A stretch of 64,000 nucleotides of DNA from Octopus sinensis (taxonomy: Eukaryota), in NCBI RefSeq assembly GCF_006345805.1, contig NC_043004.1, forward strand, positions 59,396,001 through 59,460,000. Reading direction: 5' to 3'. The notes beneath the pieces are model-generated. The model made no database searches. It was not told the DNA's origin and saw nothing but the letters and a program-made list of their open reading frames with translations. The position numbers and the translations under genes are program-made. Below are positions 7,001-60,132 of this stretch, one piece after another. Numbering within the stretch: position 1 is the stretch's first letter; every line of letters begins with the position of its first letter.

Positions 7001-7661
7001 AATGGTTGATCCTCTCAATTTCGATACCATATGACAAAGGCAAGAAATTCTGTCTTCTCTGCAATTCTGAGCTATTTTTCATTATTTTTTCTAAAAATAC
7101 TCTAGTAAACACGGTTATAGAACGAGCATACAGATGTAAGCATTGGCAGAAACATACTTTTAGTGCATATAAATAGTCTCTATCGTTATATATAGTTTAG
7201 ACTTTACTTTCCTTTATATTTAACATTCACTATTAATATCCCTACTCTTTCTGTTAGCTACTTATGACGTTATATCATATAAGGTTTTTTTAAACGATAT
7301 TAATAGCGTTCTGTCTATCGCTATACGAATCCATCATTTTTTGCTAAAATGTCGTATTGACAAGTTTCGTTTTTTCACTTTCCCGAAGAGAAGATTGCAT
7401 TGTTTATACCTTTTATTCTTTTGAATAAGTATCAGTGGAATTTTTGAAACATATGTAGAAAGTAAAAGTACTTGTTTAAACCTGCGTTAACTCCATTTTT
7501 TATTCATATTATTCAAATATTCAACGTAAACACGAAGTTTCAACCTTTATAAACAAGGAGTTACAACATCTTTACTTGTGAGATTTTTGCTGCCCTGGTA
7601 ACTATTCATTCATTTATCCGTGTTAATTGTTAACAAGGTAAAATACACTCATCTATTATAT

Positions 7662-13289: not shown

Positions 13290-13877
13290 TACACACACAC
13301 ACACACACACGTATATTTGTGTGTGCTTATATATGGATAACACTGGAGAAATTGGTAACAGTATGTCGAGATTGAGTGGTTGCTAAACGATGCTTTTGAA
13401 AAATTGTTACCTTTACATTTCATTATTATCATGCACATTAAAATGTCATATTCTTATTTATTAGCACGGTATTTTCGTCGATTCAGAGGAGAAAGGAAAA
13501 TAAACTTTAACGGATGTAGAGACTGTTTTCCATAAAATCAAGTTGAGAGATCTATAAATGTTTTTAAAACAGAGGACCACCAATCAGGATATGTCAGATC
13601 CATTATAATAGGATAAAAATGTCTTAAGCTTTTAGTAGTTGTGAATTCTTCAGTATTTGAGAATAAAAATGTCCGACAGATATTTTTAACCTGGTATTTT
13701 GTTGAATTTGCAAATTGCTGAAAATAGTGTGTTAAACTTATCAGACACAACAAATCTTCTTTAAAAGTTTTTCGATTTTACACCTTTGCTGTGTTCGGCG
13801 TAGCTAAGCATTGATACAACAATGATTACGTCCATTCAAAACACTTAAATTTTTCATGTTCGTCATATCATGTTAAT

Positions 13878-14246
13878 ATTCATCTCCATAATTTCGTCTG
13901 CCGTTACGTTCTGAGTTCAAATTCCGCCGAAGTCGACTTTGCCTTTCAGCCTTTCGGGGTCGATAAATTAAAGTACTAGTTATGAACTGGGGTCGATCTA
14001 ATCGACTGACTTCCTCCCCAAAAATGTCTGGCCTTGTGCCTAGAAAAGAAAAAAACATTCATCTCCATGATTTCGTCTGCCGTTACGTCCTGAGTTCAAA
14101 TTCCGCCGAGGTCGACTTTGCCTTTCGTCCTTTCGGGCTCGATCAATTAAGTACTAGTTATGTACTGGGGTCGATCTAATCTACTGGCCTCCTCCCACAA
14201 AATGTCGGGCCTTGTACCTAGAGCAGAAAGGAATATTCATCTCCAT
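13878..14246 (+). mobile_element. two tandem 5'-truncated family-A SINEs (tail 2)
   Basis: ~179-bp period, bounded by three copies of attcatctccat. Confidence 0.85.
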
Positions 14247-14543
14247 GTAACATCTGGGTATTTATCTATCGTTTCTGCTGCAAGAATAGCATTCGTCTAT
14301 ATCTGTTGACTTTTACTTGTTTCAGTTATTGCTTTCGGCTATGTTGCGGGTTTGATGGAAAAATTTGACTCCCAGAATCATATTTTATAATTTTAGTACG
14401 TATTTTGGTACCTAGGTCTCTAATGCCGAACCAAGAAGTTCGGTAACGTAAGCAGACCTACACCGGTTGTCAAGCAGTGATGGGGAACGAACACAAGCAC
14501 AACCTTCAACCAAACATAGACCATACACACACATACGCCCACA

Positions 14544-15464: not shown

Positions 15465-16265
15465 GCGGCGAGCTGGCAGAATCATTAGCACACCGAGCGA
15501 AATGCTTATCGGTATTTCGTCTGCCGTTACGTTCTGAGTTCAAATTCCGCCGAGGTTGTCTTTGCCTTTCATGCTTTCGGGGTCGATTGAATAAGTACCA
15601 GTTACACACTGGGGTCAATATAATCGACTTAATCCGTTTGTCTGTCCTTGTTTGTCCTCTCTGTGTTTAGCCCCTTGTGGGTAGTAAAGAAATAGGTATT
15701 TCGTCTGCCGCTACGTTCTGAGTTTAAATTCCGCCGAGGTCGACTTTGCATTTCATATTTTCGGGGTCGATTAAATAAGTACCAGTTATGCACTGAGGTC
15801 GATATAATCTACTTAACCCCTTTGTCTGTCCTTGTTTATCCTCTCTGTGTTTAGCCCCTTGTGAGTAGTAAAGAAATAGGTATTTCGTCTGTCTTTACAT
15901 TGTGAGTTCAAAATCCGCGGAGATCGACATTGCCCTTCATCCTTTCGGGCTCAATAAATTAAGAACCAGTTACGCACTGGGGTCGATGTAATAGACTTAA
16001 TCCCTTCGTCTGTCCTTGTTTGTCCCCTCTGTGTTTAGCCCCTTGTGGACAATAAAGAAACAAGAAACGTTAGCACGCCGGAGGAAATGCTTAGCAGTAT
16101 TTCGTCAGTCTTTACTTTCTGAGTTAAAAATCCACCGAGGTCGACTTTGCCTTTCATCCTTCCGGGGTCGATGAATTAAGTACCAGTTGCGTCCTGGGGT
16201 CCATCTAATCGACTTGCCCCCTGCTCAAAAATTCCGGGCCTTGCGCCTAGAACAGAGAAGAATAT
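15465..16265 (+). mobile_element. family-A SINE tetramer (tails 1,1,1,2)
   Basis: full head ggcggcgagctggcagaa, two units restarting at ggtatttcgtctg, last unit restarting at gttagcacgcc. Confidence 0.9.
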
Positions 16266-26154: not shown

Positions 26155-26592
26155 TATTTTGACTTTGTTTACATATTTCTCGATAAATTTTGAGCGTTAG
26201 ACTATATACCAGAAACTCCTAGTTAGTCGGGTACGTTCTGCGTCTGCGCAGTGATCTGATTAGTTAGAAAGAGCAAATTAGTAGACGCACATGCTCCTAT
26301 TGAGGTGCCATTTCAGAATAACAGGGCTCTTACTGACGAGTCTCCCTGAGTAAATAAATTATTTTTATTGCTGAAAAAGACGAAACTGCAGTATAAGATG
26401 AACCAAGTTAGTAAAAGTTTTTATTTTCATTTCACTAAATTTATCAAGCTTCTGTGTATCTAGTACATACTTCGCCTTTTAATGTACTTATATATGAATA
26501 ATATATGGCCTGTGCTAGAACACCGGCGATAATAATAAATTTATTTTATCGCATTTTGACTTTGTTTATATATATATATATACATATATATA

Positions 26593-29465: not shown

Positions 29466-29678
29466 TACTCTTTTACTCTTTTCCTTGTTTCAGTCATTTG
29501 ACTGCGGCCATGCTGGAGCACCGCCTTTAATCGAGCAACTCGACCCCGGGACTTATTCTTTTGTAAGCCCAGTACTTATTCTATCGGTCTCTTTTGCCGA
29601 ACCGCTAAGTAACGGGGACACACCAGCATCGGTTGTCAAGCAATGCTAGGGGAACAAACACTCACACACAAACACACA

Positions 29679-29754
<76 letters not shown>

Positions 29755-29920
29755 ATATGACGGGCTTCTTTCAGTTTCCGTCAACCAAATCCACTCACAA
29801 GGCTTTGGTCGGCCCGAGGGTATAGTAGAATACACTTGCCCAAGGTGCCACGCCGTGGGACTGAACCCGGAACCATGTGGTTGGTTAGCAAGCTACTTAC
29901 CACACAGCAACTCCTGCGCC
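29466..29920 (-). mobile_element. family-B SINE, full length
   Basis: head, body, (TA)n and tail on the minus strand. Confidence 0.9.
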
Positions 29921-33929: not shown

Positions 33930-35704
33930 ATGAATACAAACGACGAAAACATGAATGCCAGCACACCACATCACCCCACAACAACAACAACGAAATTGGC
34001 ACAAAGCCGCCTACCAAGAAAACACCGCCAACACCAACACCACTACTACGACGTCAAATGCTACATCCAAGCTTCTGCTGCTGCTAATACCGCCAACAAC
34101 AACACACCACTACCATGACTTCAATTAACACTGCCACATTAACACTTCTACTGCCAAATTCAAAACGAATTTTGCGGACGTAACAAAACAAAAAAGAACA
34201 ATGGTAACATTCACCACCAAGAGATAAACCGCACAAAGGCACTCTTCTCCAAAGAAGGAGACAAATTGCACCTTCATATTCCACAACACATCGTGGAAAC
34301 ACGCAAAAAAAAACAATAATTTATAAGTAATAAACAAAAAAACAGAAGAACAGAAAATGCACCGCAGGAAAAAATCGATAAATGCCTTCGTCCTGTATGG
34401 GACTCCAAGGAATATATCAGTTGGGGAAACAAATTTGGTACAGTCCAAGTACGTTTCCTCAACGAAAGTTTAGCAAAACGTTTTCCACATTGGAGCTACA
34501 TTCGGACGACTTGGTAATGATACCAGTCATTTAAACAAAAGGGTCACGAAAGTCCAATAAAAAAACATACCATTTGATGTCGAAACACAATGGGTGGTCT
34601 CTGCCATCTGCTTTGAAATGTCAGAGACAATGTCAGAGACAAACATCCTGGAAATCGCGGTTCTAGGAGAGAAAGACTATGTGGGCAAATCAATCGATTC
34701 CTGCTTCAATTGGATTGAAGCAGCAGAGAGAAGATACCCACCGCTATAGAACTGCCAGGAGGCTACAAACTCTATATAGTGGTAGAGGGCAGGCGACCAC
34801 GCTGCTATTTGTGTGAAGCGAAAACACACTTGAAAAAGACGTGCCCAACCACTGCACACCAAGAGCAACAACAACAACCACTACCACAACCCAAAGCACT
34901 CCGGAAAAAAAGCTCTACTACCCACACCACCATCAACACAGAAGACGACAAGAGAAGCACACAAGCTAATCCGTCATCAACAAAAAACCACTCCGACACC
35001 TGGAAAAATACCAACACTACCATCAACAGCAAAAACCCAAAGGAACAGAAAACAAAGAAAAACACACACAAAACTGATCCCCATCCCTTATACCGCACTC
35101 AACACACACAAACACTCAACAACCAACAACAACGAAAACAACAACACAACCACTTACACAGACATACATAGAAGCCCACAACATACCCTACCCCCTTCTG
35201 ATTCCTCAGAAATTTCGTCGGCAAGGACCAAGTCCCGGGAAACCCAGTGACGGAAACATGAGGAAGGCAAATAGCTACAAAAAGAAGGAAAATAAAGAGC
35301 AGAAACACAACCAAACCAAATGCAAACACGAACAAAGCAGGGGGAAATACATCTCCCGAAGACATTTCAAAACCCAACGCAAACACAGCCACACCAACAC
35401 CACAAAAACATATACAGCAAACATGCTCACAGCCATAGACACCAAAAACACAAATTTGATGGAATACATCCAATCAAAAAAAAAACATAACAGAAAGATG
35501 ACATAAAAACAAACAACCACCCATAAACAACACCACCAGACCACATCAAAATAATACACATCTCCAAAAGTCTGAACACACACTCAAAGGCATTTTCCCC
35601 AGTGCGGTGGTTAAATGCCAAAAAATATCTCACAAAGAAATGTACTGGATCTTCTCGAGGACAAACCAACGGAGGAGAAAGCAAAAACTTCGAGCAGTAA
35701 GTAA
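33930..35704 (+). pseudogene. ORF1 (gag-like, frameshifted; start uncertain), copy 1
   Basis: CYLCEAKTHLKKTC = CX2CX4HX4C at 34803-34844; Thr/Asn/Gln-rich; ends LLEDKPTEEKAKTSSSK*. Confidence 0.7.
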
Positions 35705-35730
35705 CCCTGTATTCTATTCATTAGAACTAG

Positions 35731-38700
35731 ATCAAGATTGGTTGTGTAAATGCGCGTGGCTTGGGGTCCCCTTGGAAAACAAGGGTACCTCTTAAATGAC
35801 ATAAAGTCAAATAAGTTAGAAATCATAGCCATAAGCGAGACCAGACTCCACAATCCGCGGGCCCTAAAGACCATGTTTGGCGGACAGTTCAACATTATTT
35901 TTCCCCCTGTCTGCCGAGAATGGGCGGTAGTGGCACCGCGGTACTTTTTCACAAGAGTCTGGATCTCAATGTAAGGACATATTCGTAGACCCGGAGGGTA
36001 GACTGGTCGTCCTGGATGTCGACGGCAGCAATGGGTGCGCTTTTCGGCTCGTATCAGTTTACGCACCGCCCTTAACAGGTCGGGCGGATTTCTTTCAACG
36101 TCTAGAAGTTTCTTGGGAACGTCTCGTCCTTTACTCTTAGTGGGGGATTGGAATGCTACCTTGGACACGCATGTAGACTACGTGGGTAGAGATAGGAATA
36201 GACGGGGATGCAAATGCCTCAGAGACTGCTCAGACGCTTTCAACTGTCTGACAGGTTCGACTAGACCACCGAATGCGCCAACCGTGGACATGAGCAACCG
36301 CATCGGGTCGTCGAGATCGTATCTAGATAGGATACTGTGTAGGACAGTAGATAGAGATAGCATAGGATGTCACAATTCCACATAGTCAGCTACACGGATC
36401 ACAAACTTGTGACATGTACGCTAGACTTAGGTAAGACACTTAGGCAGGGTCCGGATACTGGAAACTAAACGCGTCTTTCCCATCGAGACAAGTTTTCAGA
36501 GACCGGATTAGCACACTAGTAAAGAGGGCTTTGACGGGAGCCATCATCAAAAAAACAAATGGTGGTTTGCCCTCAAGAGAGCAGTAAAAGCAGAAGCGAT
36601 TAGGTACAGCAAAGCACTAGCCATAGATAGAAATAGAGTAGAGGGTGAGCTAGTTAAGAAGCTAGAAGAGGCAATTAGAAGCGGCATCGCATCCGACGTT
36701 TGGCGGCGAGGTTGGCCCTCGACCAACACTTCAACGCCAAACACGAAGGATGTGCTGTCAGAGCTAGGATGCGTGCTAAGGAACGAAGTGTTGGAGCCGC
36801 GAGAGAGGCCCGGGTGGCAGAGGCGCAACAGGGCAACAAAGCCACCATCGGTCACTGGTAGATGAACAGGGCGCGAATTGCTCGAGCCAAGTAAAATGTG
36901 TGAGGCCTTTCAGCAGCATTTTGCCCGACTGTTCGGAACGAGTGGAGGGCAAGAAGTGGTGGACTCAGTGCCTACCTACATAGCCTACCACGACTCTCGA
37001 CAAGAAAGGCAGGGTGCTGCGAAGGTGCCATCACGCGGCGGAAGTGCGGGAAGCGATGGCAGAATGCTCGAGGACAATCACCGGGTTTGGATGGTCTACC
37101 CTACGAGCTTTACAATTGTATGCCAGACTTGTTTGGAGATCTCTTGGCGGCGGTGTACTGCAACTGGCAGCAAAACGGGAGCATTCCTGGTTTTGTGAGC
37201 CGAGGAGCCGTAACACTGCTGAAGAAAGATCTAAAACAAGGGAAATGTAATAGATAACTTTAGGCCCATCACCTGCTTAATGCAGACTTGAAAATTTTGG
37301 CCAAGGTGCTAGCCAAGAGGTGGCGCTTGTCATCGAGAAACTGGTCGACAAGGCGCAAACATGCGCCGTGCCAGGCCGGACCATCCATGACAACCTCCAT
37401 CTGATGCGCTACATCATAGACAGGGTAGTTAACGAACCTGGCATGGGTGGGGCCCTGATCAACTTGGATCAATCAAAAGCCTTTGATAGGGTAGACCATC
37501 GATTACTTGGAGGCAGTCTGAGAGCGGCTGGTTTCGGTCCCGTCTTCCGCGGCTGGATAGCTGCCTTGTACAGGGGCATCCGTTCGGTAATTCGCGTAAA
37601 TGGACATCTATCGAGACCTTTCGACATTGCACGTTCGGTCCGTCAGGGATGCCCCCTCTCGGCGCTTCTATACGTATTGACTCTTGAGCCACTACTGCGG
37701 AAGCTGGCGACTCTAAGGGGCATCCCGCGAGAATTGGATGCGGGACGAGCGTGTCTGCATACGCGGGACGACGTCACCGTCATAGTGTCTAGCACGAGCA
37801 CATAGAGCTGGTCGGCGAGACACTGAAAAAACTACGAAGCGGTGACAGGAGCGAAAATCAACCGGGAAAAGTCAGTGGGCTTGCGACTAGGCACCTGGAG
37901 AAGCAACCCATGCCGTCCACCAGCGCCTCCGTCGGGACGCTGGACGACGCCCGGTTGAGTTGCTCGGGGGTGGTTTGGTCCGGACCTCCGAGTGGAGAAG
38001 AACTGGAACGAGATAACGAGTAGGGTGGTCACTCTCGCCCGGCAATGGGCCGAGAGGAAAACGTCCCTAAAAGGTCGAGCGGAGGTGGCGAACACGTACA
38101 TCGCGTCCGTATCTACTACCGCCTGACCGTCGTACCTTGTCCCGACCCTACCATCACCAAACTACAACGCATCCTCTTTCGCTTCTTGTGGAAAGGATGT
38201 GTCCCGATGGTCAGGCGATCCATTTGCTGTCAACACCCGTTAAAAGGAGGGCTGGGCATTGCCGTGGTTGATGATGCGCAGACACGCGCTGAGACTGCGA
38301 CATCTCTGGCTCTATGTAGACGACGGTGAACAGGTGTGGTCGCCGTTTGTGAGGCACGCTTTCCCGCAGCTCGTCTCCATGACCGAACTGCAGTCGTGGA
38401 TCAAAAAGAGGCCGAGGAAGGGCGAATGGCACCGCGAGTGTCGCGTTGCTCTCAAGCAACTCTGCCGTCCTGGGTCGACCTTAAGTGACTTCAACACAAC
38501 CAAAGCATTCTATAGGGGTTTAGTGGAGGGGAGGTACGACGACGAGCTCGGGGCGAACCTGGACGTCGACGAGGAGTACCTGACCCGCCTTCGGGACGAC
38601 TTTCGGCCAGGGCCCGGCCAACTTCCAGAGATCCCTGGCCTGGCAGTGCTACCGAGAAGCGCTACCCGTTCGGGATAAGCTCTACAGACACGGCTCGAGA

Positions 38701-40153: not shown

Positions 40154-41998
40154 ATGGCAGCATCTGCTACTAAAACTGCTATCTTTGCTAAAGACATCGC
40201 CACCAATAACAATACCAACATCACCATCACCGCCACCAAAGACCGTGCCGTCAATGCTACTAATACCACTAACACCACCGCCGTCATCAAGAACGACAAT
40301 AACAACAACAACAACAACGACAACAACAATTTCCTTCAACCACTGCTTACTCCATCACCAACAAGTGAAAAAATAACAACGACAACCAAACGAAATGCCG
40401 AAATTTGCGCTAATGCAGGACCAAATTACGCAGACAATTTCCACCCCTTGCTAGTTGCATAATCAGCAACCACAAACCTACAACCTACACCTGCCATCAA
40501 CACCAACACCACCGGCCGTAACAACAATAACAAAACACACAACAACTTCGCCGAGGCGATAAAAGAAAAAGTAACAAGAGTATCGTTTACTGCACAACAA
40601 ATAAAAGGTTGCAGAAACCTTATCACCAATGAAAACGGCAAAATACTCTTACACATACCACAACACATACTGAATGAGAAAAAAAAAGAAAACCATTGTT
40701 TATAAAATAACAAATAAAACAACTAAAAGTCCAGAAAAGGCAAGCACGGACAAAATAGAAAAGTGCCTACGCCCCATCTGGGGATACAAGGATTATGTGA
40801 CTTGGGCGAACAAGTTCGCCCACGTACAGGGTGTTTTTCAGAATGAAGAGTTGGCGAAGAAATTCTCAACGATAACCCTTCATTCTGATGAACTAACGAT
40901 GACACCGAGTTACCTTGGCCAGAATGTGACGAAGTTCATTATCAATAATGTTCCCCAAGTAACAACCACACTATGGATAACATCCGCCATAACATCCGAA
41001 ATAGAGGACTTAAACATCCTGGATATCGCTGTTTCGAAAAACAAGGACTGGCTGGGAAAGAGAATGGAGTTCCTATTCCACATAAGTCAAGACGACATTA
41101 ATAAAATTCCCACCCACGTAGTAGTCGAGGGCAGAAGGCCACGATGCTATACACGTGGTGTTGAGCCAAGTGACCTCAAAAAGGAGTGCAAATCTGCCGC
41201 TAAATTACAACAACAACAGCCACAGAAAAAACCACAAAAGCCAGCATTATTGCCCACACCACAATATGGGACGGCTAATCAAGATGCATAAATGCTGAAA
41301 AAACAACAAAGAAACAAGCAACCAACCAAACAACACCAACACCAGCGCAAAACAGATCATCATCACACCAACAACAACAACTAAACCAATTCCAACACGA
41401 GAATAACAACGAGAGACAAGACAACAAAGGATGTAGGAGAGACAATAACCACAACAAAACCCCCAGCAACACCTCCCGCGCACCACAACAATATCTACAA
41501 CCGCACAAACAGACCCAGACGCTTTACCCTTACCCCTGCTGATTCGTCAGACTTTTCATCTAACGATGAAAGTTCGACAGAATGGCAAATAGCCACAGGG
41601 GGTAAAAGAAAAAGATAAAAAAACCCAAACAAGAAATCGCAACCAAAGCAGGGAGATACCTGAACCCTGAAAACTCCATACACAACAAACAAGCACCAAC
41701 ACCACAAAAAACACACACAATGCTATCAGCGATTGACACCAAAGACTCCAAACTAATGGAGTACATCACAGGCCACACAAACATTGTGAAGATGACTTTA
41801 AAAATAGCAATCATCCACGCACCCACCACCCAAACACATCAAAATACTACCATCACACAAACACAACACCACAAACTCAAACCCTCTTCCCAAATGCTGT
41901 AGGGGGTTTCCAAAAATATCTCTCCCAAAACTTTATAAAAACCTCTCGAAGACACATCAAAGAACGAGGAAGCCCAAAACTTTCGACACAGTAAGTAA
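40154..41998 (+). pseudogene. ORF1 (disrupted; start uncertain), copy 2
   Basis: KASTDKIEKCLRPIWGYKDY...VVVEGRRPRCY is homologous to copy 1; knuckle degenerate; ends RHSK*. Confidence 0.7.
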
Positions 41999-42044
41999 CT
42001 CTCTGTACTCCTTTTTGTGTTTTAAAGCACACCCCAATAGAATC

Positions 42045-45000
42045 ATGGTCAAAATTGGTTGTGTGAACGCGCGTGGCTTGGGTCTCCTTGGAAACAAGGA
42101 TACCTCCTAAATGACATCAAGTCACATGATTGGGAATCATAGCCATAAGTGAGACCAGAATCCACGAGCCACGGGCCCTAAAGTCCATGTTTGGCGGACA
42201 GTTTAACATTTATTTTGCTCCCTGTCTGCCGAGGATGGGCGGTAGTGGCACCGCGGTACTTTTCACAAGAGCCTGGATCTCGAAGTCAAGACGATATTCG
42301 TAGACCCTGAGGGTAGACTGATCGTTCTGGATGTCGACGGCAGCAATGGGTGCGCTTTTCGACTCGTATCAGTCTACGCACCGCCTTTAACAGGTCGGCC
42401 GGATTTCTTTCGACGTCTAGAAGCATTCCTGGGAACGTCTCGTCCTTTACTTTTAGTGGGGGATTGGAATGCTACCTTGGACACACATCTAGACTATGTG
42501 GGGAGAGACAAAAACAGAAGGGGATGCAAATGCCTCAGAGACCTGCTCAGACGATTCCAACTGTCTGACAGGTACCGACTCGACCACCCAAATGCACCAA
42601 CGTGGACATGGAGCAACTGCAGTGGGTCGTCGAGATCGTATCTAGATAGGATACTGTGTAGGACAGTAGACAAGGTTAACTTAGGATGTCCACAATTCCA
42701 CACAGTCAGCTACACGGATCACAAATTCGTGACGTGTACGCTAGATTTAGATAAGGCACATAGACAGGGTCCTGGGTACTGGAAACTGAACGCATCATTC
42801 CCGTCCAGACAAGTTTTCAGAGACGGAATCAACAAAAGGGCTTTAACGGGAGCCATTGTCAACAACAAATGGTGGTTCGCCCTCAAGAGAGCAGTAAAAG
42901 CGGAAGCAATTAGATATAGCAAGGCACTAGCCGTAGATAGAAATAGAGTAGAGGGTGAGTTAGTTAAGAAGTTAGTAGAAGCAATAAGAAGTGGCATCAC
43001 ATCCGACGTTTTAGCGGCGAGGTTGGCCCTTGAACAACACTTCAACGCCAAACACGAAGGGTGTGCAGTCAGGGCTAGGATGCGTGCTCTAAGGATGGAA
43101 GGTGTTGGAGCCGCGAGGGAGGCCCGGGTGGCGGAGGCGCAGCAGGGCAACAAAGCCACCATTCGGTCTCTGGTAGATGAACAGGGCGCGAATTGCTCGA
43201 GCCCAGCAAGATTTGCGAGACATTTCAGCAGCACTTTGCCCGACTGTACGGGAAGAGTGGTGAGCGTGAACGCAGGGTGGACTTCAGTGCCTACCTGCAC
43301 AGCCTACCACGACTCTCGGCAAGAGAGGCAGAGTGCTGCGAAGGTGCCATCACAGCGGCGGATGTGCGGGACGCGATGGCAGAATGCTCGAGAGACAAAT
43401 CGCTGGGTTTGGATGGTCTGCCCTACTAGTTTTACAATTGTATGCCAGACTTGTTTGGAGACGTCTTGGCAGCGGTATACTGCAACTGGCAGCAAAACGG
43501 GAGCATACCCGGTTTTGTGAGTCGAGGAGCTGTAACTCTGCTGAAGAAAGATCCAAACAAGGGGAACATTATAGATAACTTTAGACCAATCACTCTGCTC
43601 AATGCAGACCTGAAAATTTTGACAAAGATGTTAGCCAAGAGGTTGGCGCTTTTCATCGAGAAACTGGTCGACAACGCACAAACGTGTGCCGTGCCGGGCC
43701 GGAGCATCCATGACAACCTCCATCTGATACGCTACATCATAGACAGGGTAGTTAACGAACCTGGCATGAGTGGGGCCCTGATCCACTTGGATCAATCGAA
43801 AGCCTTCGATAGGGTAGACCGTCGATACTTGGAGGCAGTCCTGAGAGCGGCTGGTTTCGGTCCCGTCTTCCGCGGCTGGATAGTTGCCTTGTACAGAGGC
43901 ATCCGTTCGGTAATTCGCGTAAATGGACATCTATCGAGACCTTTCGACATTGCACGTTCGGTCCGTCAGGGATGCCCCCTCTCGGCGCTTCTATACGTAT
44001 TGACTCTTGAGCCACTACTGCGGAAGCTGGCAACTTTGAGGGGCATCCCGCGAGAATTGGGATGCGAGACGAGCGTGTCTGCATACGCGGACGACGTCAC
44101 CGTCATAGTGTTAAGCCACGAGCACATCGAGCGGGTCGGCGAGACACTGAAAGACTACGAAGCGGTGACAGGAGCAAAAATCAACCGGGAAAAGTCAATG
44201 GGCTTGCGGCTCGGCACCTGGAGAAGCAAACCCATGCCGTCCACCAGTACCTTCATCGTGGGACGCTGGACAGGTTAAGTTCCTCGGGATCTGGTTAGGT
44301 CCGGACCTCCAAATGGAGAAGAACTGGAACGAGATAACGAGTAGGGTGGTCACTCTCGCCCAGCAATGGGACGAGAGGAAACTGTCCCTAAAAGGTCGGG
44401 CGGAGGTGGCGAAAGCGTACATCGCGTCCATCATCTACTACTGCCTGACCGTCGTACCTTGTCCCGACCCTACCATCACCAAACTAGAACGCATTCTCTT
44501 CTGCTTCTTGTGGAAAGGATGCGTCCCGATGGTCAGGCGATCCATTTGCTGTCAACACCCGTTAAAAGGAGGGCTGGGCATGCCGTGGTTGATGATGCGC
44601 AGACACGCGCTGAGACTGTGACATCTCCGGCTCTATGTAGACGACGGTGAACAGGTGTGGTCACCGTTTGTGAGGCACGCTTTCCCGCAGCTCGTCTCCA
44701 TGACCGAACTGCAGTCGTGCATCAAAAAGAGGCCGAGGAAGGGCGAATAGCACCGCGAGTGTCGCGTTGCTCTCAAGCAACTCTGCCGTCCCGGGTCGAC
44801 CTTGAGTGACTTCAACACAACCAAAACATTCTATAGGGGATTAGTGGAGGGGAGGTACGACGACGATCTTGGAGCAAACCTGGGCGTCGACGAGGAATAC
44901 CTGACCCGCCTGTTTCAAACGACTTTCGGCCTGGGACCTATGGATAACTTCCAGAGATCCCTGGCCTGGCGGTGCTACCGAGAAGCGCTACCCGTTCGGG

Positions 45001-45461
45001 ATAAGCTCTATAGGCATGGCTCGAGAAACACGGGGCCGACCTGCCCGAGATGCGGGCAGAGCGACGAAACCGCTCTGCATGCAATCGTGCAGTGTCCAGC
45101 AATTACCGACCTGTGGACTTATGTCGAACGACTGCTGTCACGTGTGGGACGTGTCGGTTTATCAGCCGAGTCTATCGTCAATATCGTCACGCCTCCTTCC
45201 TTCAAACGGGAAGGAAGAGCTACTTTTATCATACTTGTGGCTATGGCGAAAGAATGTATCTGGTGGACGCGCCTGAAAGGATTAGAGACAAACACTTTCC
45301 TCTCTGGTCAATCTCTCATCAACTTCTTCAAGTATCACTTGGAGAGGAAAGTGAGAGTAGAGAGGCAAGTTTTGTCTAGTGAATGTTTAAAAAAAAGATG
45401 GGTGAATGTAGCAAGGATGGCACGTATGAACGACGAAGCCACCTTGACTATGATTCTATGA
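42045..45461 (+). pseudogene. ORF2 APE endonuclease-RT-zinc finger (few disruptions), copy 2
   Basis: MVKIGCVNARG, GDWNATLD, YTDHKF, YWKLN, QGCPLS, YADD, CPRCGQSDETALHAIVQCP. Confidence 0.93.
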
Positions 45462-47334: not shown

Positions 47335-47494
47335 TGGAGTGGCTGTGTGGTAAGTAGCTTGCTAACCAACCACATGGTTCCGGGTTCAGTCCCACTGCGT
47401 GGCATCTTGGGCAAGTGTCTGCTACTATAGCCCCGAGCCGACCAATGCCTTGTGAGTGGATTTGGTAGACGGAAACTGAAAGAAGCCTGTCGTA

Positions 47495-47528
<34 letters not shown>

Positions 47529-47868
47529 ATGAACGGATGCACTGAAGAAGCACGGACATTTGAATTACGTAAATAATTCTTTTGTTAAGGCTGAAACCAA
47601 GGTATGCATTTAATTCTGTTTTTAATATAAATTTTCATATGTCATGCCCGCCAAAGTTGGTTCTGGTGTTCGCTGTATTTTTCCTCTAGAGAATTTCCTG
47701 TAGTTTGATCGTTGATGGTCTATTTCTAGCATACGGCCGACTCCCTAGCAGTAAGCCCTGCCAATATACACATATATTAGAATTGTCTCTGATTTCTCAG
47801 ATTTTTGTATGCTGGACTACTGGTTTAAATTGATATTAAAATTAATATTAATTTATCTCCCTCATTAT

Positions 47869-47934
<66 letters not shown>

Positions 47935-47941
47935 ATATATA

Positions 47942-47979
<38 letters not shown>

Positions 47980-48200
47980 TTGTGTGTCTGTGTTTGTCCC
48001 CCTAGCATTGCTTGATAACCGATGCTGGTGTGTTTACGTCCCCGTCACTTAGCGATTTGGCAAAAGAGACCGATAGAATAAGTACTGGGCTTACAAAGAA
48101 TAAGTCCCGGGGTCGATTTGCTCGACTAAAGGCGGTGCTCCAGCATGGCCGCAGTCAAATGACTGAAACAAGTGAAAGAGTAAAAGAGAAAAAAGAGAGA
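47335..48200 (+). mobile_element. family-B SINE split by ~340 bp of unrelated sequence in its (TA)n tract
   Basis: 5' half 47335-47495, 3' half 47960-48200. Confidence 0.8.
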
Positions 48201-51236: not shown

Positions 51237-52009
51237 AAGTCTGTGAGGGACCTGGGTATCGACGTGAGTGATAATACCTCTTTCCAAGTGCACATTACCA
51301 GGATGACGACAAAGTGCAGACGACTGGCTGGCTGGTTGGATCCTAAGAACATTCAGAACCAGAGATAAGGAAACCATGATGGTTCTCTGGCGGACATTCG
51401 TCCTCAGCCGCCTGGATTACTGCTCACAGCCATGGTCACCCACCAGTGTGAAATTAACAGCGGACGTTGAAGAAATCCAGAGAAGATTCACAAAGACGAT
51501 CGTCTCTTTGCAACAGCTCAGCTACTGGGAAATGTTGAAACAGCTAAGTCTCTACTCCCTGGAGACAAGACGGGAGAGGTATGCAGTAATATATGTTTGG
51601 AAGATCCTGGAAGGAATTGTGCCAAATTTTGGCATTGTAAGCTACACCAATGCTAGAACGGGACGACACTGCATAGCCCCAAAGATCCTAGCAATGCCAT
51701 CACGCTTCAGGGCCAGCTACTGCAACAGCCTGGGTTTCAAGGGCCCACAGCTGTTTAATACTCTCCCAAAGAGTCTGAGGAACTTGTACAAAGTAGATGT
51801 AGCGGTTTTTATATCAAAGCTGGACATCTTCCTGTCGAGAGTCCCAGATGAACCTACCTCACGGCAAGTGGTGCAAATGAGAGTAGCTATATCAAAACTC
51901 CATTCTTCACCAAGTGCCGCATATTAGAGGAGGCTCTTCGTAATAACAGTGTAGCACAAAACAGCGGTGCATCAGCATGGCCGCAGCTCTGAGCTGAAAC
52001 AAGAAAAAA
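51237..52009 (+). mobile_element. CR1/L2-type LINE 3' fragment (RT thumb/C-terminus plus 3' UTR)
   Basis: VRDLGI, ILRTF, LWRTFVLSRLDYCSQPWSP, EEIQRRFTK, LYSLETRRER, GPQLFNTLP; frameshift near 51325; 5' end lost in (TA)n. Confidence 0.88.
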
Positions 52010-53776: not shown

Positions 53777-54690
53777 TGCAAATTGTTAATAATATTCTCC
53801 TCTAGTTCCTAGATGCCTGCTGATTAAAACCAGACTTGCAGTCTACTAGCTCTTCTGTATAACTAGAACCCTCTTTTTTTCTTTTTCCTTTTTTTCCCTT
53901 CTTTCCCTATTTCTTTCTCTTTTCTCTTTTTTCTTTTTCTTCTTCTTATTCTCTGTTTCCTTTTCTCTTCTCTTTTAGTCCCCCTTCCCCCCCCCTTTTT
54001 GCTCCCTCCATTATTTTCTCTCTTTTCTTCTATTCCCTTCTCTATTCTTGGCCGATCTAGAAAGCCCTTCAGCCTTTAAGAGTTAAATAGCTACAGCCTC
54101 TTGTGAATAGCAGTAATGTGATTAATGTGGCAAATACCTAATCGTATAACAAGGATTGATACCTACCTCATTGTGTTCAACCATTGTAAAATTTATCGCC
54201 TGTGAATATGAAATTCATCTCCATTTCTCTGGAAATTTACATCTACACCATTGGAATCTGTGCATCTATACAAAGGATTAATTCACCCTCTCTGTAATGC
54301 TAATAAGCAGGAATTGAGACCCACCTCGTTGTAATTAACAATGGATAAATTTGTCTTCTGTGAGTATATAATCCCTCATAATATCTATGGAAATTCATAT
54401 GGATTAGGTCACCTTCTCTGTGATGCTATCAAAACTTTTTTAAAATTCTGTGATAAGACTGTACATCATCTTTAAAGAACTTTAATGAACTTTAGAAATC
54501 TGTTTAATTATCTACATTATTTCATGAGTATAGCCTCAAATACTAGGATGTCTAGAGAACTTACATGTATTTTAGCTGATGAGTACGGGACTCGTTTTTA
54601 TGCTGTAATCTTTGCAACTTTTAATAAAACCTGTCCTTGTATGAAACGATCGTACTAAAAACCTATCCATTCTTGTTGCTTCTTTCTCGC

Positions 54691-56774: not shown

Positions 56775-56842
<68 letters not shown>

Positions 56843-57073
56843 TAATCAATATAGGGTGGCAAAAAAAAAAAAAAATTTGTAGAATTTTTTTGCCACCAGC
56901 GGCCTAGTGGGAAAAAATTAAATAGTCAAAGACCATTTTTAAGTTCAACATCAACAATCAAGGAACGGCCATAATAGGCCATTCACCCACTAGAAATAAC
57001 AGCCAAAGCTTCAACCGCAAATAAAAATCAATTCCGTAAACCAGGAGAAAATTTAAAAAACATTTACCCTGTA

Positions 57074-57180
57074 ATTTCTTATACGATGCACCGTTTCATC
57101 TGCTGTTTAATGGTAAACTAACCTGATTAAATTAAATCAAGCCAATCTTCCATAGGCCCTCAGATTCTTCAGTAAGAAAT
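57074..57180 (-). ncRNA. type I hammerhead ribozyme (inverted unit)
   Basis: reverse complement of the plus-strand motif described at 58051-58157. Confidence 0.8.
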
Positions 57181-57559
57181 AGCCCAAGTCGGAACAGATA
57201 TTTTCACGAGGCATTTCCGACCCTGCCAAGGTAATAGCTGACCTAAAATTTTCAAATCATCGCACTCGCGCCAAATTTATCGGCAGCAAATAAATATAAG
57301 CCGTCGATTCCATTACGGAATTAACCAGAAAATTCATAATTAATCAATATAGGGTGGCAAAAAAAATTTGTAGAATTTTTTTGCCACCAGCGGCCTAGTG
57401 GGAAAAAATTAAATAGTCAAAGACCATTTTTAAGTTCAACATCAACAATCAAGGAACGGCCATAATAGGCCATTCACCCACTAGAAATAACAGCCAAAGC
57501 TTCAACCGCAAATAAAAATCAAAAATATAAAAATAAAAATATCTGTTCCGACTTGGGCT

Positions 57560-57666
57560 ATTTCTTACTGAAGAATCTGAGGGCCTATGGAAGATTGGCT
57601 TGATTTAATTTAATCAGGTTAGTTTACCATTAAACAGCAGATGAAACGGTGCATCGTATAATAAAT
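57560..57666 (+). ncRNA. type I hammerhead ribozyme, one stem I mismatch
   Basis: as 58051-58157 but the 3' stem I strand is taataaat; predicted cut after 57658. Confidence 0.75.
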
Positions 57667-58050
57667 TACAGGGTAAATGTTTTTTAAATTTTCTCCTGGT
57701 TTACGGAATTGATTTTTATTTGCGGTTGAAGCTTTGGCTGTTATTTCTAGTGGGTGAATGGCCTATTATGGCCGTTCCTTGATTGTTGATGTCGAACTTA
57801 AAAATGGTCTTTGACTATTTAATTTTTTCCCACTAGGCCGCTGGTGGCAAAAAAATTCTACAAATTTTTTTTGCCACCCTATATTGATTAATTATGAATT
57901 TTCTGGTTAATTCCGTAATGGAATCGACGGCTTATATTTATTTGCTGCCGATAAATTTGGCGCGAGTGCGATGATTTGAAAATTTTAGGTCAGATATTAC
58001 CTTGGCAGGGTCGGAAATGCCTCGTGAAAATATCTGTTCCGACTTGGGCT

Positions 58051-58157
58051 ATTTCTTACTGAAGAATCTGAGGGCCTATGGAAGATTGGCTTGATTTAAT
58101 TTAATCAGGTTAGTTTACCATTAAACAGCAGATGAAACGGTGCATCGTATAAGAAAT
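58051..58157 (+). ncRNA. type I hammerhead ribozyme
   Basis: ATTTCTTA CTGAAGA ATCTG[58 nt]CAGAT GAA ACGG-TGCA-TCGT A TAAGAAAT; predicted cut after 58149. Confidence 0.85.
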
Positions 58158-58542
58158 TACAGGGTAAATGTTTTTTAAATTTTCTCCTGGTTTACGGAAT
58201 TGATTTTTATTTGCGGTTGAAGCTTTGGCTGTTATTTCTAGTGGGTGAATGGCCTATTATGGCCGTTCCTTGATTGTTGATGTTGAACTTAAAAATGGTC
58301 TTTGACTATTTAATTTTTTCCCACTAGGCCGCTGGTGGCAAAAAAATTCTACAAATTTTTTTTTGGCACCCTATATTGATTAATTATGAATTTTCTGGTT
58401 AATTCCGTAATGGAATCGACGGCTTATATTTATTTGCTGCCGATAAATTTGGCGCGAGTGCGATGATTTGAAAATTTTAGGTCAGATATTACCTTGGCAG
58501 GGTCGGAAATGCCTCGTGAAAATATCTGTTCCGACTTGGGCT

Positions 58543-58649
58543 ATTTCTTACTGAAGAATCTGAGGGCCTATGGAAGATTGGCTTGATTTAATTTAATCAG
58601 GTTAGTTTACCATTAAACAGCAGATGAAACGGTGCATCGTATAAGAAAT
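58543..58649 (+). ncRNA. type I hammerhead ribozyme
   Basis: same motif; predicted cut after 58641. Confidence 0.85.
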
Positions 58650-59034
58650 TACAGGGTAAATGTTTTTTAAATTTTCTCCTGGTTTACGGAATTGATTTTT
58701 ATTTGCGGTTGAAGCTTTGGCTGTTATTTCTAGTGGGTGAATGGCCTATTATGGCCGTTCCTTGATTGTTGATGTTGAACTTTAAAATGGTCTTTGACTA
58801 TTTAATTTTTTCCCACTAGGCCGCTGGTGGCAAAAAAATTCTACAAATTTTTTTTTGCCACCCTATTTTGATTAATTATGAATTTTCTGGTTAATTCCGT
58901 AATGGAATCGACGGCTTATATTTATTTGCTGCCGATAAATTTGGCGCGAGTGCGATGATTTGAAAATTTTAGGTCAGATATTACCTTGGCAGGGTCGGAA
59001 ATGCCTCGTGAAAATATCTGTTCCGACTTGGGCT

Positions 59035-59141
59035 ATTTCTTACTGAAGAATCTGAGGGCCTATGGAAGATTGGCTTGATTTAATTTAATCAGGTTAGTTT
59101 ACCATTAAACAGCAGATGAAACGGTGCATCGTATAAGAAAT
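59035..59141 (+). ncRNA. type I hammerhead ribozyme
   Basis: same motif; predicted cut after 59133. Confidence 0.85.
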
Positions 59142-59284
59142 TACAGGGTAAATGTTTTTTAAATTTTCTCCTGGTTTACGGAATTGATTTTTATTTGCGG
59201 TTGAAGCTTTGGCTGTTATTTCTAGTGGGTGAATGGCCTATTATGGCCGTTCCTTGATTGTTGATATATATATATATGTATATA

Positions 59285-59680
59285 CACTTTTACTCTTTTA
59301 CTTGTTTTAGTCATTTGACTGCGGCCATGCTGGAGCACCGCCTTTTGTCGAGCAAATCGACCCCGGGACTTATTCTTTGTAAGTCCAATACTTATTCTAT
59401 CGGTCTCTTTTGCCGAACCCCTAAGTGACGGGGACATAAACACACCAGCATCGGTTGTAAAGCAATGCTAGGGGGACAAACACAGACACACAAACACATA
59501 CACACACATACATATACATATACATATATATACATATATACGACAGGCTTCTTTCAGTCTCCGTCTACCAAATCCACTCACAAGGCATTGGTCGGCCCGG
59601 GGCTATAGCAGAAAACACTTGCCCAAGATACCACACAGTGGGACTGAACCCTGAACCATGTGGTTGGTCAGCAAGCCACA
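59285..59680 (-). mobile_element. family-B SINE
   Basis: tail, microsatellite and body; head slightly truncated. Confidence 0.9.

Positions 59681-60132
<452 letters not shown>

What the first reader, a model, noticed from the sequence alone, without database searches (positions are those of the whole stretch)
56843..59264. Tandem ~492-bp repeat with a complete type I hammerhead ribozyme in each full unit: putative retrozyme / viroid-like circRNA element
Seen: at 58051-58157 there is a perfect 8-bp stem I (ATTTCTTA/TAAGAAAT) and a canonical CUGAAGA core. Stem II is closed by ATCTG/CAGAT and extends into a long hairpin (attggcttgatt/aatcaggttagt, 12 consecutive WC or GU pairs, plus atgg/ccat). 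Then come GAAA, stem III ACGG/UCGU with a palindromic UGCA loop, and a GUA cleavage triplet. The motif occurs four times on + (cuts after 57658, 58149, 58641, 59133) and once on - (57074-57180). Established: tandem type I hammerhead repeats (newt satellite 2, schistosome Sm-alpha, metazoan non-LTR retrozymes) self-cleave multimeric transcripts into monomers that can circularise, and are thought to be mobilised by Penelope-like elements. Inference: a + transcript gives 491-492-nt monomers. That size is large for such repeats, the long stem II is unusual, and I do not know of a description in cephalopods. Caveat: pair 10.1-11.1 is A-U rather than the usual G-C.
Basis: partly seen in the sequence, partly recalled or inferred. 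Interest (0 to 1): 0.95.

Follow-up and report, generated by a model that had tools for sequence, protein, structure and literature searches.

The report
Hammerhead-ribozyme retrozyme array in (TA)n
A young, non-coding 492-bp tandem repeat whose every unit carries a self-cleaving hammerhead ribozyme motif sits in a TA microsatellite in the inverted-plus-tandem layout that Penelope-like retrotransposons leave behind, so it is a new example of a known class (animal "retrozymes") and not a new kind of element.

Summary
A 492-bp repeat (3.5 head-to-tail copies, 57536-59265) is preceded by 1.4 inverted copies (56843-57522). Each full unit carries a complete type I hammerhead: 8-bp helix I, CUGAAGA, GAAA, a 4-bp helix III with a palindromic UGCA loop, and a GUA cleavage triplet. 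One of the four + copies has a C·U mismatch in helix I. The motif is far beyond chance (0 hits in about 100 Mb of random sequence), yet Rfam's hammerhead models do not score it.

The retrozyme reading is supported and extended:
- The unit is non-coding, 36% GC and strand-asymmetrically structured.
- All copies differ only by private substitutions (about 0.3%).
- The two arrays meet 5'-to-5', their 3' ends abut (TA)n, and a 16-nt direct repeat flanks the whole insertion.
- This matches Penelope-like-element integration, with both target strands primed on a circular or multimeric RNA.

Four further solitary hammerhead loci of unrelated sequence lie in the same window (7.4, 26.3, 47.5 and 54.6 kb). 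All sit next to (TA)n and all have a 42-68-nt helix II. Rfam scores two of them as Hammerhead_1 (31.5 and 22 bits), and one is demonstrably an insertion.

Cleavage, circular RNA and genome-wide copy number could not be tested. I rate it a new member of a known kind with an unusual ribozyme variant, of moderate interest.

The parts
56827..56842 (.). Left copy of the 16-nt direct repeat ATATATATATATGTAT flanking the whole insertion (candidate target-site duplication), at the end of a (TA)33 tract (56776-56842)
   Evidence: exact 16-nt match to 59266-59281; for the (TA)n tract. Low-complexity sequence: the 16-mer occurs 11 times in the window.
56843..57522 (-). Inverted array of 1.4 units, read on the - strand from unit position 51 (57522) through 492 and on to 235 (about 56843). 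Its 3' end abuts the left (TA)n.
57074..57180 (-). Complete hammerhead motif of the inverted array; predicted cut between 57082 and 57081 on the - strand
57523..57535 (.). 13-nt A/T filler (AAATATAAAAATA) joining the 5' ends of the two arrays head to head
57536..59265 (+). Direct array of 3.5 units: partial 370-492 (57536-57658), three full units (57659-58149, 58150-58641, 58642-59133), partial 1-132 (59134-59265). Its 3' end abuts the right (TA)n.
57560..57666 (+). Hammerhead motif with a C.U mismatch in helix I (G->T at 57662); predicted cut after 57658
58051..58157 (+). Complete type I hammerhead motif; predicted cut after 58149
58543..58649 (+). Complete type I hammerhead motif; predicted cut after 58641
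59035..59141 (+). Complete type I hammerhead motif; predicted cut after 59133
57843..57878 (+). Near-perfect hairpin GGUGGCAAAAAAAUU-CUACA-AAUUUUUUUUGCCACC, present in every unit; role unknown
   Evidence: seen as a spurious miRNA-like match and in the circular fold
59266..59281 (.). Right copy of the 16-nt flanking direct repeat
26156..26568 (+). Sister locus A: a unique segment between two (TA)n tracts, bounded by the 16-nt direct repeat ATTTTGACTTTGTTTA (period 397). Carries a hammerhead at 26328-26398 with G10.1-C11.1, AC-UGCA-GU and GUA.
   Evidence: Rfam Hammerhead_1 31.5 bits, E=1.2e-6, full model
47529..47871 (+). Sister locus B: a 343-bp insertion in the internal microsatellite of a SINE-like repeat, with a hammerhead-like motif at 47535-47611 (A10.1-U11.1)
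   Evidence: Alignment A1 shows the segment is absent from three paralogous repeat copies. No Rfam hit.
54570..54660 (+). Sister locus C: hammerhead (CUGAUGA, AC-GAUC-GU, GUA, helix II 60 nt), 31 nt upstream of (TA)80; left end of its segment not defined
   Evidence: Rfam Hammerhead_1 22 bits, E=0.002, full model
7377..7463 (+). Sister locus D: same architecture (AC-AUAU-GU, GUA, helix II 56 nt) but core CCGAAGA (U4->C), so probably inactive. Its segment runs into (TA)19 at 7657.

Best explanation
The locus is one young insertion of a non-autonomous, non-coding retroelement of the animal non-LTR retrozyme class.

Proposed life cycle (inferred, following Cervera & de la Pena 2020): a transcript reading through the + array folds a type I hammerhead in each unit and cuts itself after the GUA at 57658, 58149, 58641 and 59133. 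[quoted passage not shown] Because helix III plus its loop is self-complementary, cutting may work best when two neighbouring motifs pair as a dimer in the multimeric transcript.

Proposed integration (inferred from the anatomy): a Penelope-like element's endonuclease and reverse transcriptase cut both strands of a (TA)n tract about 16 bp apart and primed cDNA synthesis on both. Copying round a circular (or along a multimeric) RNA gave 3.5 units from one side and 1.4 units from the other. The two cDNAs were then joined 5'-to-5' through a 13-nt A/T filler.

The same genome carries other, unrelated-in-sequence families built on the same ribozyme design (long helix II, AC-NNNN-GU helix III, GUA). 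Four of them lie in this window, all at (TA)n.
For: Shown by the sequence:
- Complete hammerhead core and three helices in four of five motifs, against 0 hits in about 100 Mb of random sequence.
- Period 492, 99% identity.
- No ORF: the longest stop-free stretch is 47 aa. GC is 36%.
- The + polarity circle folds to -132 kcal/mol (z -4.0) against -88.9 (z -2.7) for the - polarity. The long helix II holds five G.U pairs that become C.A mismatches in the complement, which points to RNA-level structure on the + strand.
- The catalytic fold is only 1.5 kcal/mol above the MFE. Helix III plus loop, ACGGUGCAUCGU, forms a 12-bp self-duplex at -17.5 kcal/mol.
- All 7 substitutions among 2.4 kb of copies are private, so both arrays derive from one monomer sequence.
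- The arrays are head to head in different phases (unit 51 meets unit 370; 3' ends at units 235 and 132), with both 3' ends on (TA)n. An exact 16-nt repeat flanks the insertion.

From the literature:
- PLE insertions are partial tandems, often preceded by an inverted 5'-truncated copy, with a (TA)n bias in Naiads. Naiads occur in Octopus spp. (PMC8557442).
- A purified PLE protein cleaves and extends both strands, prefers AT-rich DNA and initiates internally on the RNA (PMC11167929).
- Retrozyme definition and the PLE hypothesis.

Sister loci:
- Rfam Hammerhead_1 matches the full model at A (31.5 bits) and C (22 bits).
- B is an insertion absent from paralogous repeat copies.
- A has a unique 16-nt flanking repeat.
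- All five loci share C15.2-G16.2, A17 and a 42-68-nt helix II, none of which the descriptor required.
Against: - Rfam's hammerhead models give no score for this motif.
- Pair 10.1-11.1 is A-U, not the near-universal G-C.
- In a lone motif a competing pairing (UACUG/CGGUG) sequesters C3-G5, and helix III has only about 10% occupancy.
- No independent copies of this family could be retrieved, so there is no unbiased covariation test.
- No PLE reverse transcriptase or GIY-YIG ORF is in the window; only LINE-type RTs are.
- The two arrays start reverse transcription at different unit positions (132 and 235), whereas the studied PLE initiates at defined internal sites.
- The 16-nt flanking repeat is low-complexity.
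- No expression or circular-RNA data exist.
- The host species was not identified. The best named relative of a LINE RT in the window is from a cuttlefish at 49% identity.
Confidence: 0.72

Rival explanations
1. DNA-level satellite birth. A single retrozyme or PLE-terminal monomer landed here, was expanded into a tandem array by unequal crossover or replication slippage, and a later inverted duplication made the - array. No circular RNA template or rolling-circle reverse transcription is involved.
For: The 2026 preprint proposes exactly this route for tandem arrays (local amplification, unequal crossover). Tandem arrays and palindromes do arise by DNA mechanisms, and with only 7 substitutions the copy genealogy is poorly resolved.
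Against: No substitution is shared by a subset of copies, as stepwise duplication would tend to leave. The inverted array is not a fold-back of the adjacent sequence: 186 nt separate the inverted arms and the phases differ (unit 51 against unit 370). Both outer ends, in different phases, abut the same microsatellite, with a 16-nt flanking repeat. That fits one integration event better than several DNA rearrangements.
Confidence: 0.15
2. An ordinary tandem repeat that contains a hammerhead look-alike without catalytic function. The motif is a decayed or accidental match, and the RNA, if made at all, is not processed.
For: No Rfam hit. A-U at 10.1-11.1. The thermodynamic ensemble of a lone motif disfavours helix III. 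One copy already carries a helix I mismatch, and sister locus D has a dead core.
Against: All 11 invariant core positions, A15.1-U16.1 and H17 are intact in every copy. Chance expectation is zero in about 100 Mb. The motif sits in the genomic context where such ribozymes are known to occur, namely tandem, AT-rich and non-coding. Four sister motifs share the same unusual design, and two are recognised by Rfam's Hammerhead_1.
Confidence: 0.07
3. Integrated cDNA of an exogenous, replicating viroid-like or delta-like circular RNA, not a genomic retroelement.
For: The multimeric, more-than-unit-length copy and the compact, highly paired 492-nt circle resemble rolling-circle replicons.
Against: No ribozyme of any Rfam class is found in the minus polarity. 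There is no ORF. No match appears in viral, metagenome or prokaryote collections apart from a chance hit in a phage gene. The same ribozyme design recurs in four unrelated genomic insertions at (TA)n in the same window.
Confidence: 0.03
4. The inverted-plus-tandem layout is an assembly artefact of a simple tandem array.
For: Craig et al. note that PLE-type tandem and inverted structures often cause assembly problems.
Against: The - array carries its own private substitution (unit position 337) and a distinct homopolymer length. The junction has a specific 13-nt filler. The outer 16-nt repeats match the two ends of the whole structure.
Confidence: 0.03

Closest known systems
Metazoan non-LTR retrozymes (Cervera & de la Pena 2020, PMC7229834; coral, mussel, axolotl; historically newt satellite 2 and Schistosoma Sm-alpha)
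   Same: A type I hammerhead in every unit of a short, AT-rich, non-coding head-to-tail repeat. Palindromic helix III/loop 3 that allows dimeric ribozymes. A highly paired predicted circle. Flanking duplications longer than 4 bp. Suspected dependence on Penelope-like elements.
   Different: Helix II is a 68-nt imperfect hairpin (canonical about 4 bp plus a loop), helix I is 8 bp (canonical 6), helix III is 4 bp (canonical 1-2), pair 10.1-11.1 is A-U, and the triplet is GUA. Rfam does not score it. In the papers I read, retrozymes were not described with a microsatellite target or an inverted 5'-truncated companion array.
Penelope-like elements (Naiad, Neptune, Poseidon; Craig et al. 2021 PMC8557442; Frangieh et al. 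2024 PMC11167929)
   Same: Insertion anatomy: a partial tandem plus an adjacent inverted 5'-truncated copy, a (TA)n / AT-rich target, and evidence that both target strands are cut and extended. Hammerheads occur in the pseudo-LTRs of several clades.
   Different: There is no RT/GIY-YIG ORF, so the unit is non-autonomous. PLE hammerheads are usually minimal, with little or no helix III, whereas this one has a full helix III. Naiads, the (TA)n-targeting clade reported in Octopus, lack hammerheads.
Rfam Hammerhead_1 (RF00163)
   Same: Core, topology and cleavage-site rule. Sister motifs A and C align to the full 45-position model.
   Different: The motif of the finding scores below detection. A and C stay below the 34-bit gathering score because helix II carries a 28-54-nt insertion.
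Plant LTR retrozymes and viroid-like satellite RNAs
   Same: Ribozyme-processed, circularisable non-coding RNAs of a few hundred nucleotides.
   Different: Those use type III hammerheads. Plant retrozymes also have LTRs, a PBS and a PPT with 4-bp duplications, while viroid-like RNAs carry ribozymes in both polarities. None of these features is present here.

Membership tests
Hammerhead ribozyme, type I | Invariant core C3 U4 G5 A6 N7 G8 A9 / G12 A13 A14, A15.1-U16.1, H17 not G | tested here: met
   CUGAAGA ... GAAA ... U-A| in all five copies
Hammerhead ribozyme, type I | Three helices around the core, with helix I open-ended and helices II and III closed | tested here: met
   Helix I 8 bp, helix II 5 bp plus extension, helix III 4 bp with a UGCA loop. 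One copy has a C.U mismatch in helix I.
Hammerhead ribozyme, type I | G10.1-C11.1 at the base of helix II (most conserved pair after 15.1-16.1) | tested here: not met
   A-U here and in sister B, G-C in A, G.U in C and D. Natural active exceptions with U.U are documented, so this weakens membership without excluding it.
Hammerhead ribozyme, type I | Score at or above the Rfam RF00163 gathering threshold (34 bits) | tested here: not met
   No hit at gathering score or at E<=10. Sister A scores 31.5 bits and sister C 22 bits, both full-length. Sister B gives no hit.
Hammerhead ribozyme, type I | Base-pair covariation among independent copies | tested here: inconclusive
   Copies in the locus are 99.7% alike and no relatives could be retrieved. 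The five families in the window keep all helices with different sequences, but they were found by a descriptor that demands pairing.
Hammerhead ribozyme, type I | Helix I - helix II tertiary contact | not testable with these tools
   Internal loops exist at the expected distance in both helices. A 5-bp complementarity between the 5' flank of helix I and the helix II internal loop was seen by eye in R and A only.
Hammerhead ribozyme, type I | Mg2+-dependent site-specific self-cleavage | not testable with these tools
   Requires transcription and cleavage assays.
Metazoan non-LTR retrozyme | Type I hammerhead within each unit of a head-to-tail repeat of about 50-1000 bp | tested here: met
   Published size range 51-972 bp.
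Metazoan non-LTR retrozyme | Non-coding, GC below about 45-50%, no LTRs | tested here: met
   GC 36%; longest stop-free stretch 47 aa; no terminal direct repeats other than the units themselves. PBS and PPT were not searched for specifically.
Metazoan non-LTR retrozyme | Target-site duplication longer than 4 bp, when present | tested here: inconclusive
   Exact 16-nt flanking repeat, but low-complexity. Sister A has a unique 16-nt flanking repeat, which could instead be terminal redundancy.
Metazoan non-LTR retrozyme | Expressed as monomeric linear and circular RNA | not testable with these tools
   No transcript data are reachable.
Metazoan non-LTR retrozyme | Dispersed multicopy family in a genome that also holds Penelope-like elements | not testable with these tools
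   Only one locus of this family lies in the 64 kb, and no PLE ORF is in the window. The literature reports PLEs in cephalopods, but the host species is not established.
Penelope-like element (autonomous) | ORF with a telomerase-like RT and a GIY-YIG endonuclease | tested here: not met
   No ORF in the unit. The window's RT ORFs are LINE-type (RVT_1, zf-RVT).
Penelope-like element (insertion signature only) | Partial tandem with an adjacent inverted 5'-truncated copy; microsatellite / AT-rich target | tested here: met
   compared.
Viroid-like / delta-like circular RNA replicon | Ribozymes in both polarities and/or a replication-associated ORF | tested here: not met
   No ribozyme family on the - polarity of the unit; no ORF.

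The most novel reading that the evidence does not exclude
The host genome carries a large, essentially unannotated superfamily of (TA)n-targeting retrozymes, built on a distinct hammerhead subclass: a 42-68-nt helix II, an AC-NNNN-GU helix III, a GUA triplet and a tolerated non-G-C 10.1-11.1 pair. Standard Rfam annotation misses this subclass. This locus would then be a snapshot of how such elements integrate: rolling-circle reverse transcription of a circular RNA, primed on both strands of a staggered 16-bp cut made by a Penelope-like element. That element may be a hammerhead-less, (TA)n-targeting Naiad, which would mean the ribozyme elements parasitise PLE lineages they did not descend from.
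Probability: 0.3. Interest if true: 0.7.

Novelty: new member of a known kind. Interest (0 to 1): 0.5.

Why it matters
Retrozymes are thought to spread through circular RNA copied by Penelope-like elements. So far the link rests on co-occurrence and on sequence similarity to PLE termini.

This young locus shows the PLE insertion signature on a retrozyme: an inverted plus a direct array in different phases, a (TA)n target and a 16-nt flanking repeat. Its star-like copy genealogy favours one multimer-producing event over stepwise DNA amplification.

It also shows that hammerheads with long helix II insertions escape Rfam-based annotation. Five loci in 64 kb were missed at the gathering threshold, so counts such as the 235 hammerheads reported for the giant squid may be large underestimates. 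The natural series G-C / G.U / A-U at 10.1-11.1, plus a U4C copy, offers ready-made test and control constructs.

Tried and rejected
- Rfam at the gathering threshold on the whole window, and at E<=10 on 2.7 kb and on 141 nt, gave no hammerhead at the locus. The weak miRNA/sRNA matches there are low-complexity or hairpin noise.
- A pattern scan for the core with a 45-75-nt spacer found two metagenome contigs (L001, L002). Both are the same GC-rich phage gene with no stems and no repeat, so they are chance hits. The prokaryote-genome and viral collections gave nothing.
- I tried to reach other copies through the only ORF of at least 30 aa in the unit. No protein in the collection shares words with it.
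- Host identification through a LINE RT was inconclusive. The exact protein is not on record. The best named hit is cuttlefish at 49% identity, and the closest hit (75%) is an unnamed ENA contig.
- ARAGORN finds no tRNA-like gene, so the SINE-like repeat stays unclassified.
- BLAST between the five hammerhead-bearing segments shows no similarity outside the ribozyme. I therefore dropped the idea that they are copies of one family.
- I looked for terminal redundancy at loci B and C and found none.
- A simple fold-back origin of the inverted array is rejected, because the arms are separated by 186 nt and are out of phase.
- Two papers I wanted are not held: the cave-cricket pDo500 satellite and the exchange of the 10.1-11.1 pair.
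- A possible pseudoknot between the 5' flank of helix I and the helix II internal loop was seen by eye in two motifs. I do not claim it, because 5-bp matches are frequent in AT-rich sequence.
Full report
**1. What is there**

Tandem Repeats Finder reports one long-period array in the window: 57536-59265, period 492, 3.5 copies, 99% matches. A repeat search adds an inverted arm: 56867-57522 is the reverse complement of 57709-58364.

I mapped everything onto a monomer that starts at the predicted cut (58150-58641, 492 nt).
- The + array consists of unit positions 370-492 (57536-57658), three full units (57659-58149, 58150-58641, 58642-59133), and positions 1-132 (59134-59265).
- The - array, read on its own strand, runs from position 51 (57522) through 492 (57082) and on to about 235 (56843).
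- A 13-nt A/T filler (57523-57535) joins the two arrays.

So the arrays lie head to head. Their 5' ends meet in the middle, out of phase (51 against 370). Their 3' ends point outward, also at different unit positions (235 and 132). Each 3' end abuts a TA microsatellite: (TA)33 on the left and (AT)6GTAT… on the right. An exact 16-nt direct repeat, ATATATATATATGTAT, flanks the whole structure (56827-56842 and 59266-59281). It is low-complexity and occurs 11 times in the window, so I treat it as a candidate target-site duplication only. No other copy of the unit exists in the 64 kb.

**2. The ribozyme motif**

An explicit descriptor required helix I, CUGANGA, helix II, GAAA, helix III beginning A15.1-U16.1, and H17 not G. 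It finds complete motifs at 58051-58157, 58543-58649 and 59035-59141 (+) and at 57074-57180 (-).
- Helix I is 8 bp.
- Helix II is AUCUG/CAGAU, continued by a 7x7 internal loop, then AUGG/CCAU, then a 14-bp arm with five G.U pairs.
- Helix III is ACGG-UGCA-UCGU.
- The cleavage triplet is GUA.

The fifth motif (57560-57666) carries G->T at 57662, which breaks the C2.4-G1.4 pair. At these stem lengths, random sequence with the window's dinucleotide statistics gave no hit in 96 Mb and none in 102 Mb, both strands. Because the five copies are duplicates, this counts as one non-random event.

Rfam 15 does not report a hammerhead here at gathering score, nor at E<=10 on 2.7 kb or on 141 nt. The likely reasons are the 58-nt insertion in helix II, A-U at 10.1-11.1 and the longer helix III. 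This is inference, supported by the sister motifs in section 5.

In a lone 107-nt motif the catalytic secondary structure is -29.2 kcal/mol against an MFE of -30.7. The competitor pairs UACUG with CGGUG, sequestering C3-G5, and helix III has about 10% occupancy. Helix III plus its loop (ACGGUGCAUCGU) is fully self-complementary and forms a 12-bp duplex at -17.5 kcal/mol. That is the dimer-capable design described for newt, axolotl and PLE hammerheads.

**3. The rest of the unit**
- It is non-coding. The only ORF of at least 30 aa is a TTG-start 30-mer, and the longest stop-free stretch in any frame of a multimer is 47 aa.
- GC content is 36%.
- As a circle, the + polarity folds to -132 kcal/mol (z = -4.0 against shuffles) and the - polarity to -88.9 (z = -2.7). 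This asymmetry and the G.U-rich helix II point to structure selected in the + RNA.
- T-runs of 5-9 in the + strand make a Pol III transcript unlikely.
- No ribozyme of any Rfam class appears on the - polarity.

**4. Genealogy of the copies**

Across 2.4 kb of aligned copies there are seven substitutions plus homopolymer length changes. All seven are private to one copy, and none is shared by a subset. Both arrays therefore trace to a single monomer sequence at about the same time, roughly 0.3% divergence ago.

**5. Sister loci in the same window**

These were not part of the finding. Relaxing the descriptor revealed three more intact motifs outside the locus, and a fourth with one core substitution.

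| Locus | Coordinates (+) | Expected per 64 kb | Rfam Hammerhead_1 | 10.1-11.1 | Loop 3 | Helix II + loop |
|---|---|---|---|---|---|---|
| R (the finding) | 58051-58157 | 0 | no hit | A-U | UGCA | 68 nt |
| A | 26328-26398 | 0.0006 | 31.5 bits, E = 1.2e-6 | G-C | UGCA | 42 nt |
| B | 47535-47611 | 0 | no hit | A-U | CAAG | 44 nt |
| C | 54570-54660 | 0 | 22.0 bits, E = 0.002 | G.U | GAUC | 60 nt |
| D | 7377-7463 | 0.012 (relaxed scan) | not run | G.U | AUAU | 56 nt |

The expected counts come, the Rfam results, and the structural columns. The gathering score is 34 bits. A and C match the full 45-position model, with helix II treated as an insertion. D has CCGAAGA (U4->C) in the core.

The segments share no sequence outside the ribozyme. 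The motifs nevertheless share features the descriptor did not impose:
- C15.2-G16.2 and A17 (a GUA triplet) in all five. GUA made up only 6 of 48 null hits.
- A 4-nt loop 3, palindromic in four of the five.
- A helix II plus loop of 42-68 nt that folds as a long imperfect hairpin.

All are associated with (TA)n.
- A lies between two (TA)n tracts and is bounded by a unique 16-nt direct repeat with period 397. That is either a target duplication or slightly more than one unit.
- B starts 7 nt from (TA)18 and ends at (AT)45.
- C ends 31 nt before (TA)80.
- D's segment runs into (TA)19.

Only 8.9% of the window lies within 40 nt of a perfect (TA)8+ tract. Alignment with three other copies of a SINE-like repeat shows that B's 343-bp segment is an insertion into that repeat's internal microsatellite. 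This is direct evidence of mobility and of the target preference.

**6. Mechanism**

The anatomy is shown by the data, and the process is inferred. The known model for animal retrozymes has four steps:
1. The repeat is transcribed.
2. Hammerhead self-cleavage releases monomers.
3. A host RNA ligase closes them into circles.
4. A retrotransposon's reverse transcriptase copies the circle into tandem cDNA.

Penelope-like elements are the suspected helper. PLE insertions are typically partial tandems with an adjacent inverted 5'-truncated copy, and they favour microsatellites: (TA)n for Naiads, which occur in Octopus spp.. A purified PLE protein cuts and extends both target strands, prefers AT-rich DNA and starts reverse transcription internally on the RNA.

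The present locus is what that biochemistry predicts on a circular or multimeric template. There are two cDNAs primed from the two sides of a staggered cut in (TA)n, one running 3.5 turns and the other 1.4 turns. They end at unrelated positions and were joined 5'-to-5' with a short filler. All units were identical at birth.

One point this does not explain: the two priming positions (units 132 and 235) differ, whereas the studied PLE initiates at defined sites.

**7. Rivals**
- Stepwise DNA amplification followed by inversion, the route favoured for tandem arrays in the 2026 preprint, fits the star-like genealogy and the out-of-phase arms poorly. With so few substitutions it is not excluded.
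- A non-functional look-alike is unlikely given the intact core, the context and the sister motifs. Only a cleavage assay can settle it.
- An integrated exogenous replicon is disfavoured by the lack of a minus-strand ribozyme or an ORF, and by the recurrence of the design in unrelated genomic insertions.
- Misassembly of the inverted junction cannot be excluded without reads, but the private variants and the matching outer repeats argue against it.

**8. Comparison and novelty**

The element meets every testable sequence criterion of metazoan non-LTR retrozymes. Its size is ordinary for the class, which spans 51-972 bp.

The differences lie in the ribozyme: a long helix II, an 8-bp helix I, a 4-bp helix III, A-U at 10.1-11.1 and a GUA triplet. 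The other difference is the clearly readable PLE-type insertion signature with a (TA)n target, which the retrozyme papers I read do not mention.

The host is probably a cephalopod. The best named relative of a LINE RT in the window is from a cuttlefish at 49% identity, and from my own memory the repeat landscape resembles octopus. The species was not established.

In cephalopods I found only a bare count of 235 Rfam Hammerhead_1 hits, plus Penelope elements, in the giant squid genome paper. I found no description of retrozymes there. The paper library covers only open-access papers and preprints.

I therefore file the locus as a new member of a known kind, carrying a ribozyme variant that standard annotation misses. 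Interest is moderate. It would rise if the long-helix-II design proves active and abundant, and if the insertion signature holds genome-wide.

Noticed in passing
window 26156-26568, 47529-47871, 54570-54660, 7377-7463: Four further solitary type I hammerhead loci (A, B, C, D) of unrelated sequence, all on the + strand, all next to (TA)n and all with a 42-68-nt helix II and a GUA triplet. A and C are scored by Rfam Hammerhead_1 (31.5 and 22 bits). B is an insertion absent from paralogous repeat copies. D has a U4->C core change.
   Followed up: yes
window 47336-48190, 59285-59685, 5558-5952, 29466-29916 and at least six further partial copies: An abundant SINE-like repeat of about 400 bp with an internal (TA)n/(TG)n microsatellite. 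One copy directly flanks the 492-nt array on the right, and its microsatellite hosts hammerhead insertions B and probably D. ARAGORN finds no tRNA-like part.
   Followed up: partly
window 7377-59265: All five hammerhead-bearing loci have their (main) orientation on the + strand, which is 1 in 16 by chance. This might reflect orientation bias relative to a host transcription unit.
   Followed up: no
window 34779-38678 and 40674-45461: Two adjacent copies of a LINE-type retrotransposon on the + strand (ORFs with RVT_1 and zf-RVT, plus an upstream ORF1-like ORF), with about 50% GC against about 35% background. The closest named relative is a cuttlefish protein at 49% identity. There is no GIY-YIG domain, so these are not the Penelope-like helper.
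   Followed up: partly
window 13875-14247 and 15511-16060: Two tandem arrays with periods of 179 and 184 bp (2-3 copies, 86-88% identity) sharing the same consensus. They are probably tandemly arranged SINE-like units.
   Followed up: no
window 57843-57878 (and the same unit position in every copy): A near-perfect 15-bp hairpin with G/C-clamped ends and A/U-run arms inside the retrozyme unit. The - array ends 13 nt past it. Unit 58150-58641 carries a C->G change in its 3' arm.
   Followed up: no
window 58046-58076 and 26317-26346: In motifs R and A, the five nucleotides just 5' of helix I (GGGCU; CAGGG) can pair with the 5' side of the helix II internal loop (GGCCU; CCCUG). This is a possible pseudoknot of the kind reported for other hammerheads. 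It was seen by eye, and such a match is frequent by chance in AT-rich sequence.
   Followed up: no
window 51376-51927: A 183-aa ORF without any Pfam match. From memory it resembles the C-terminal region of CR1/L2-type LINE ORF2 proteins.
   Followed up: no
L001 9551-9619 and L002 2651-2719: Two marine metagenome contigs match the 24 specified bases of the hammerhead search pattern inside a conserved phage gene. It is a reminder that core-plus-spacer patterns alone give false positives in coding DNA.
   Followed up: yes
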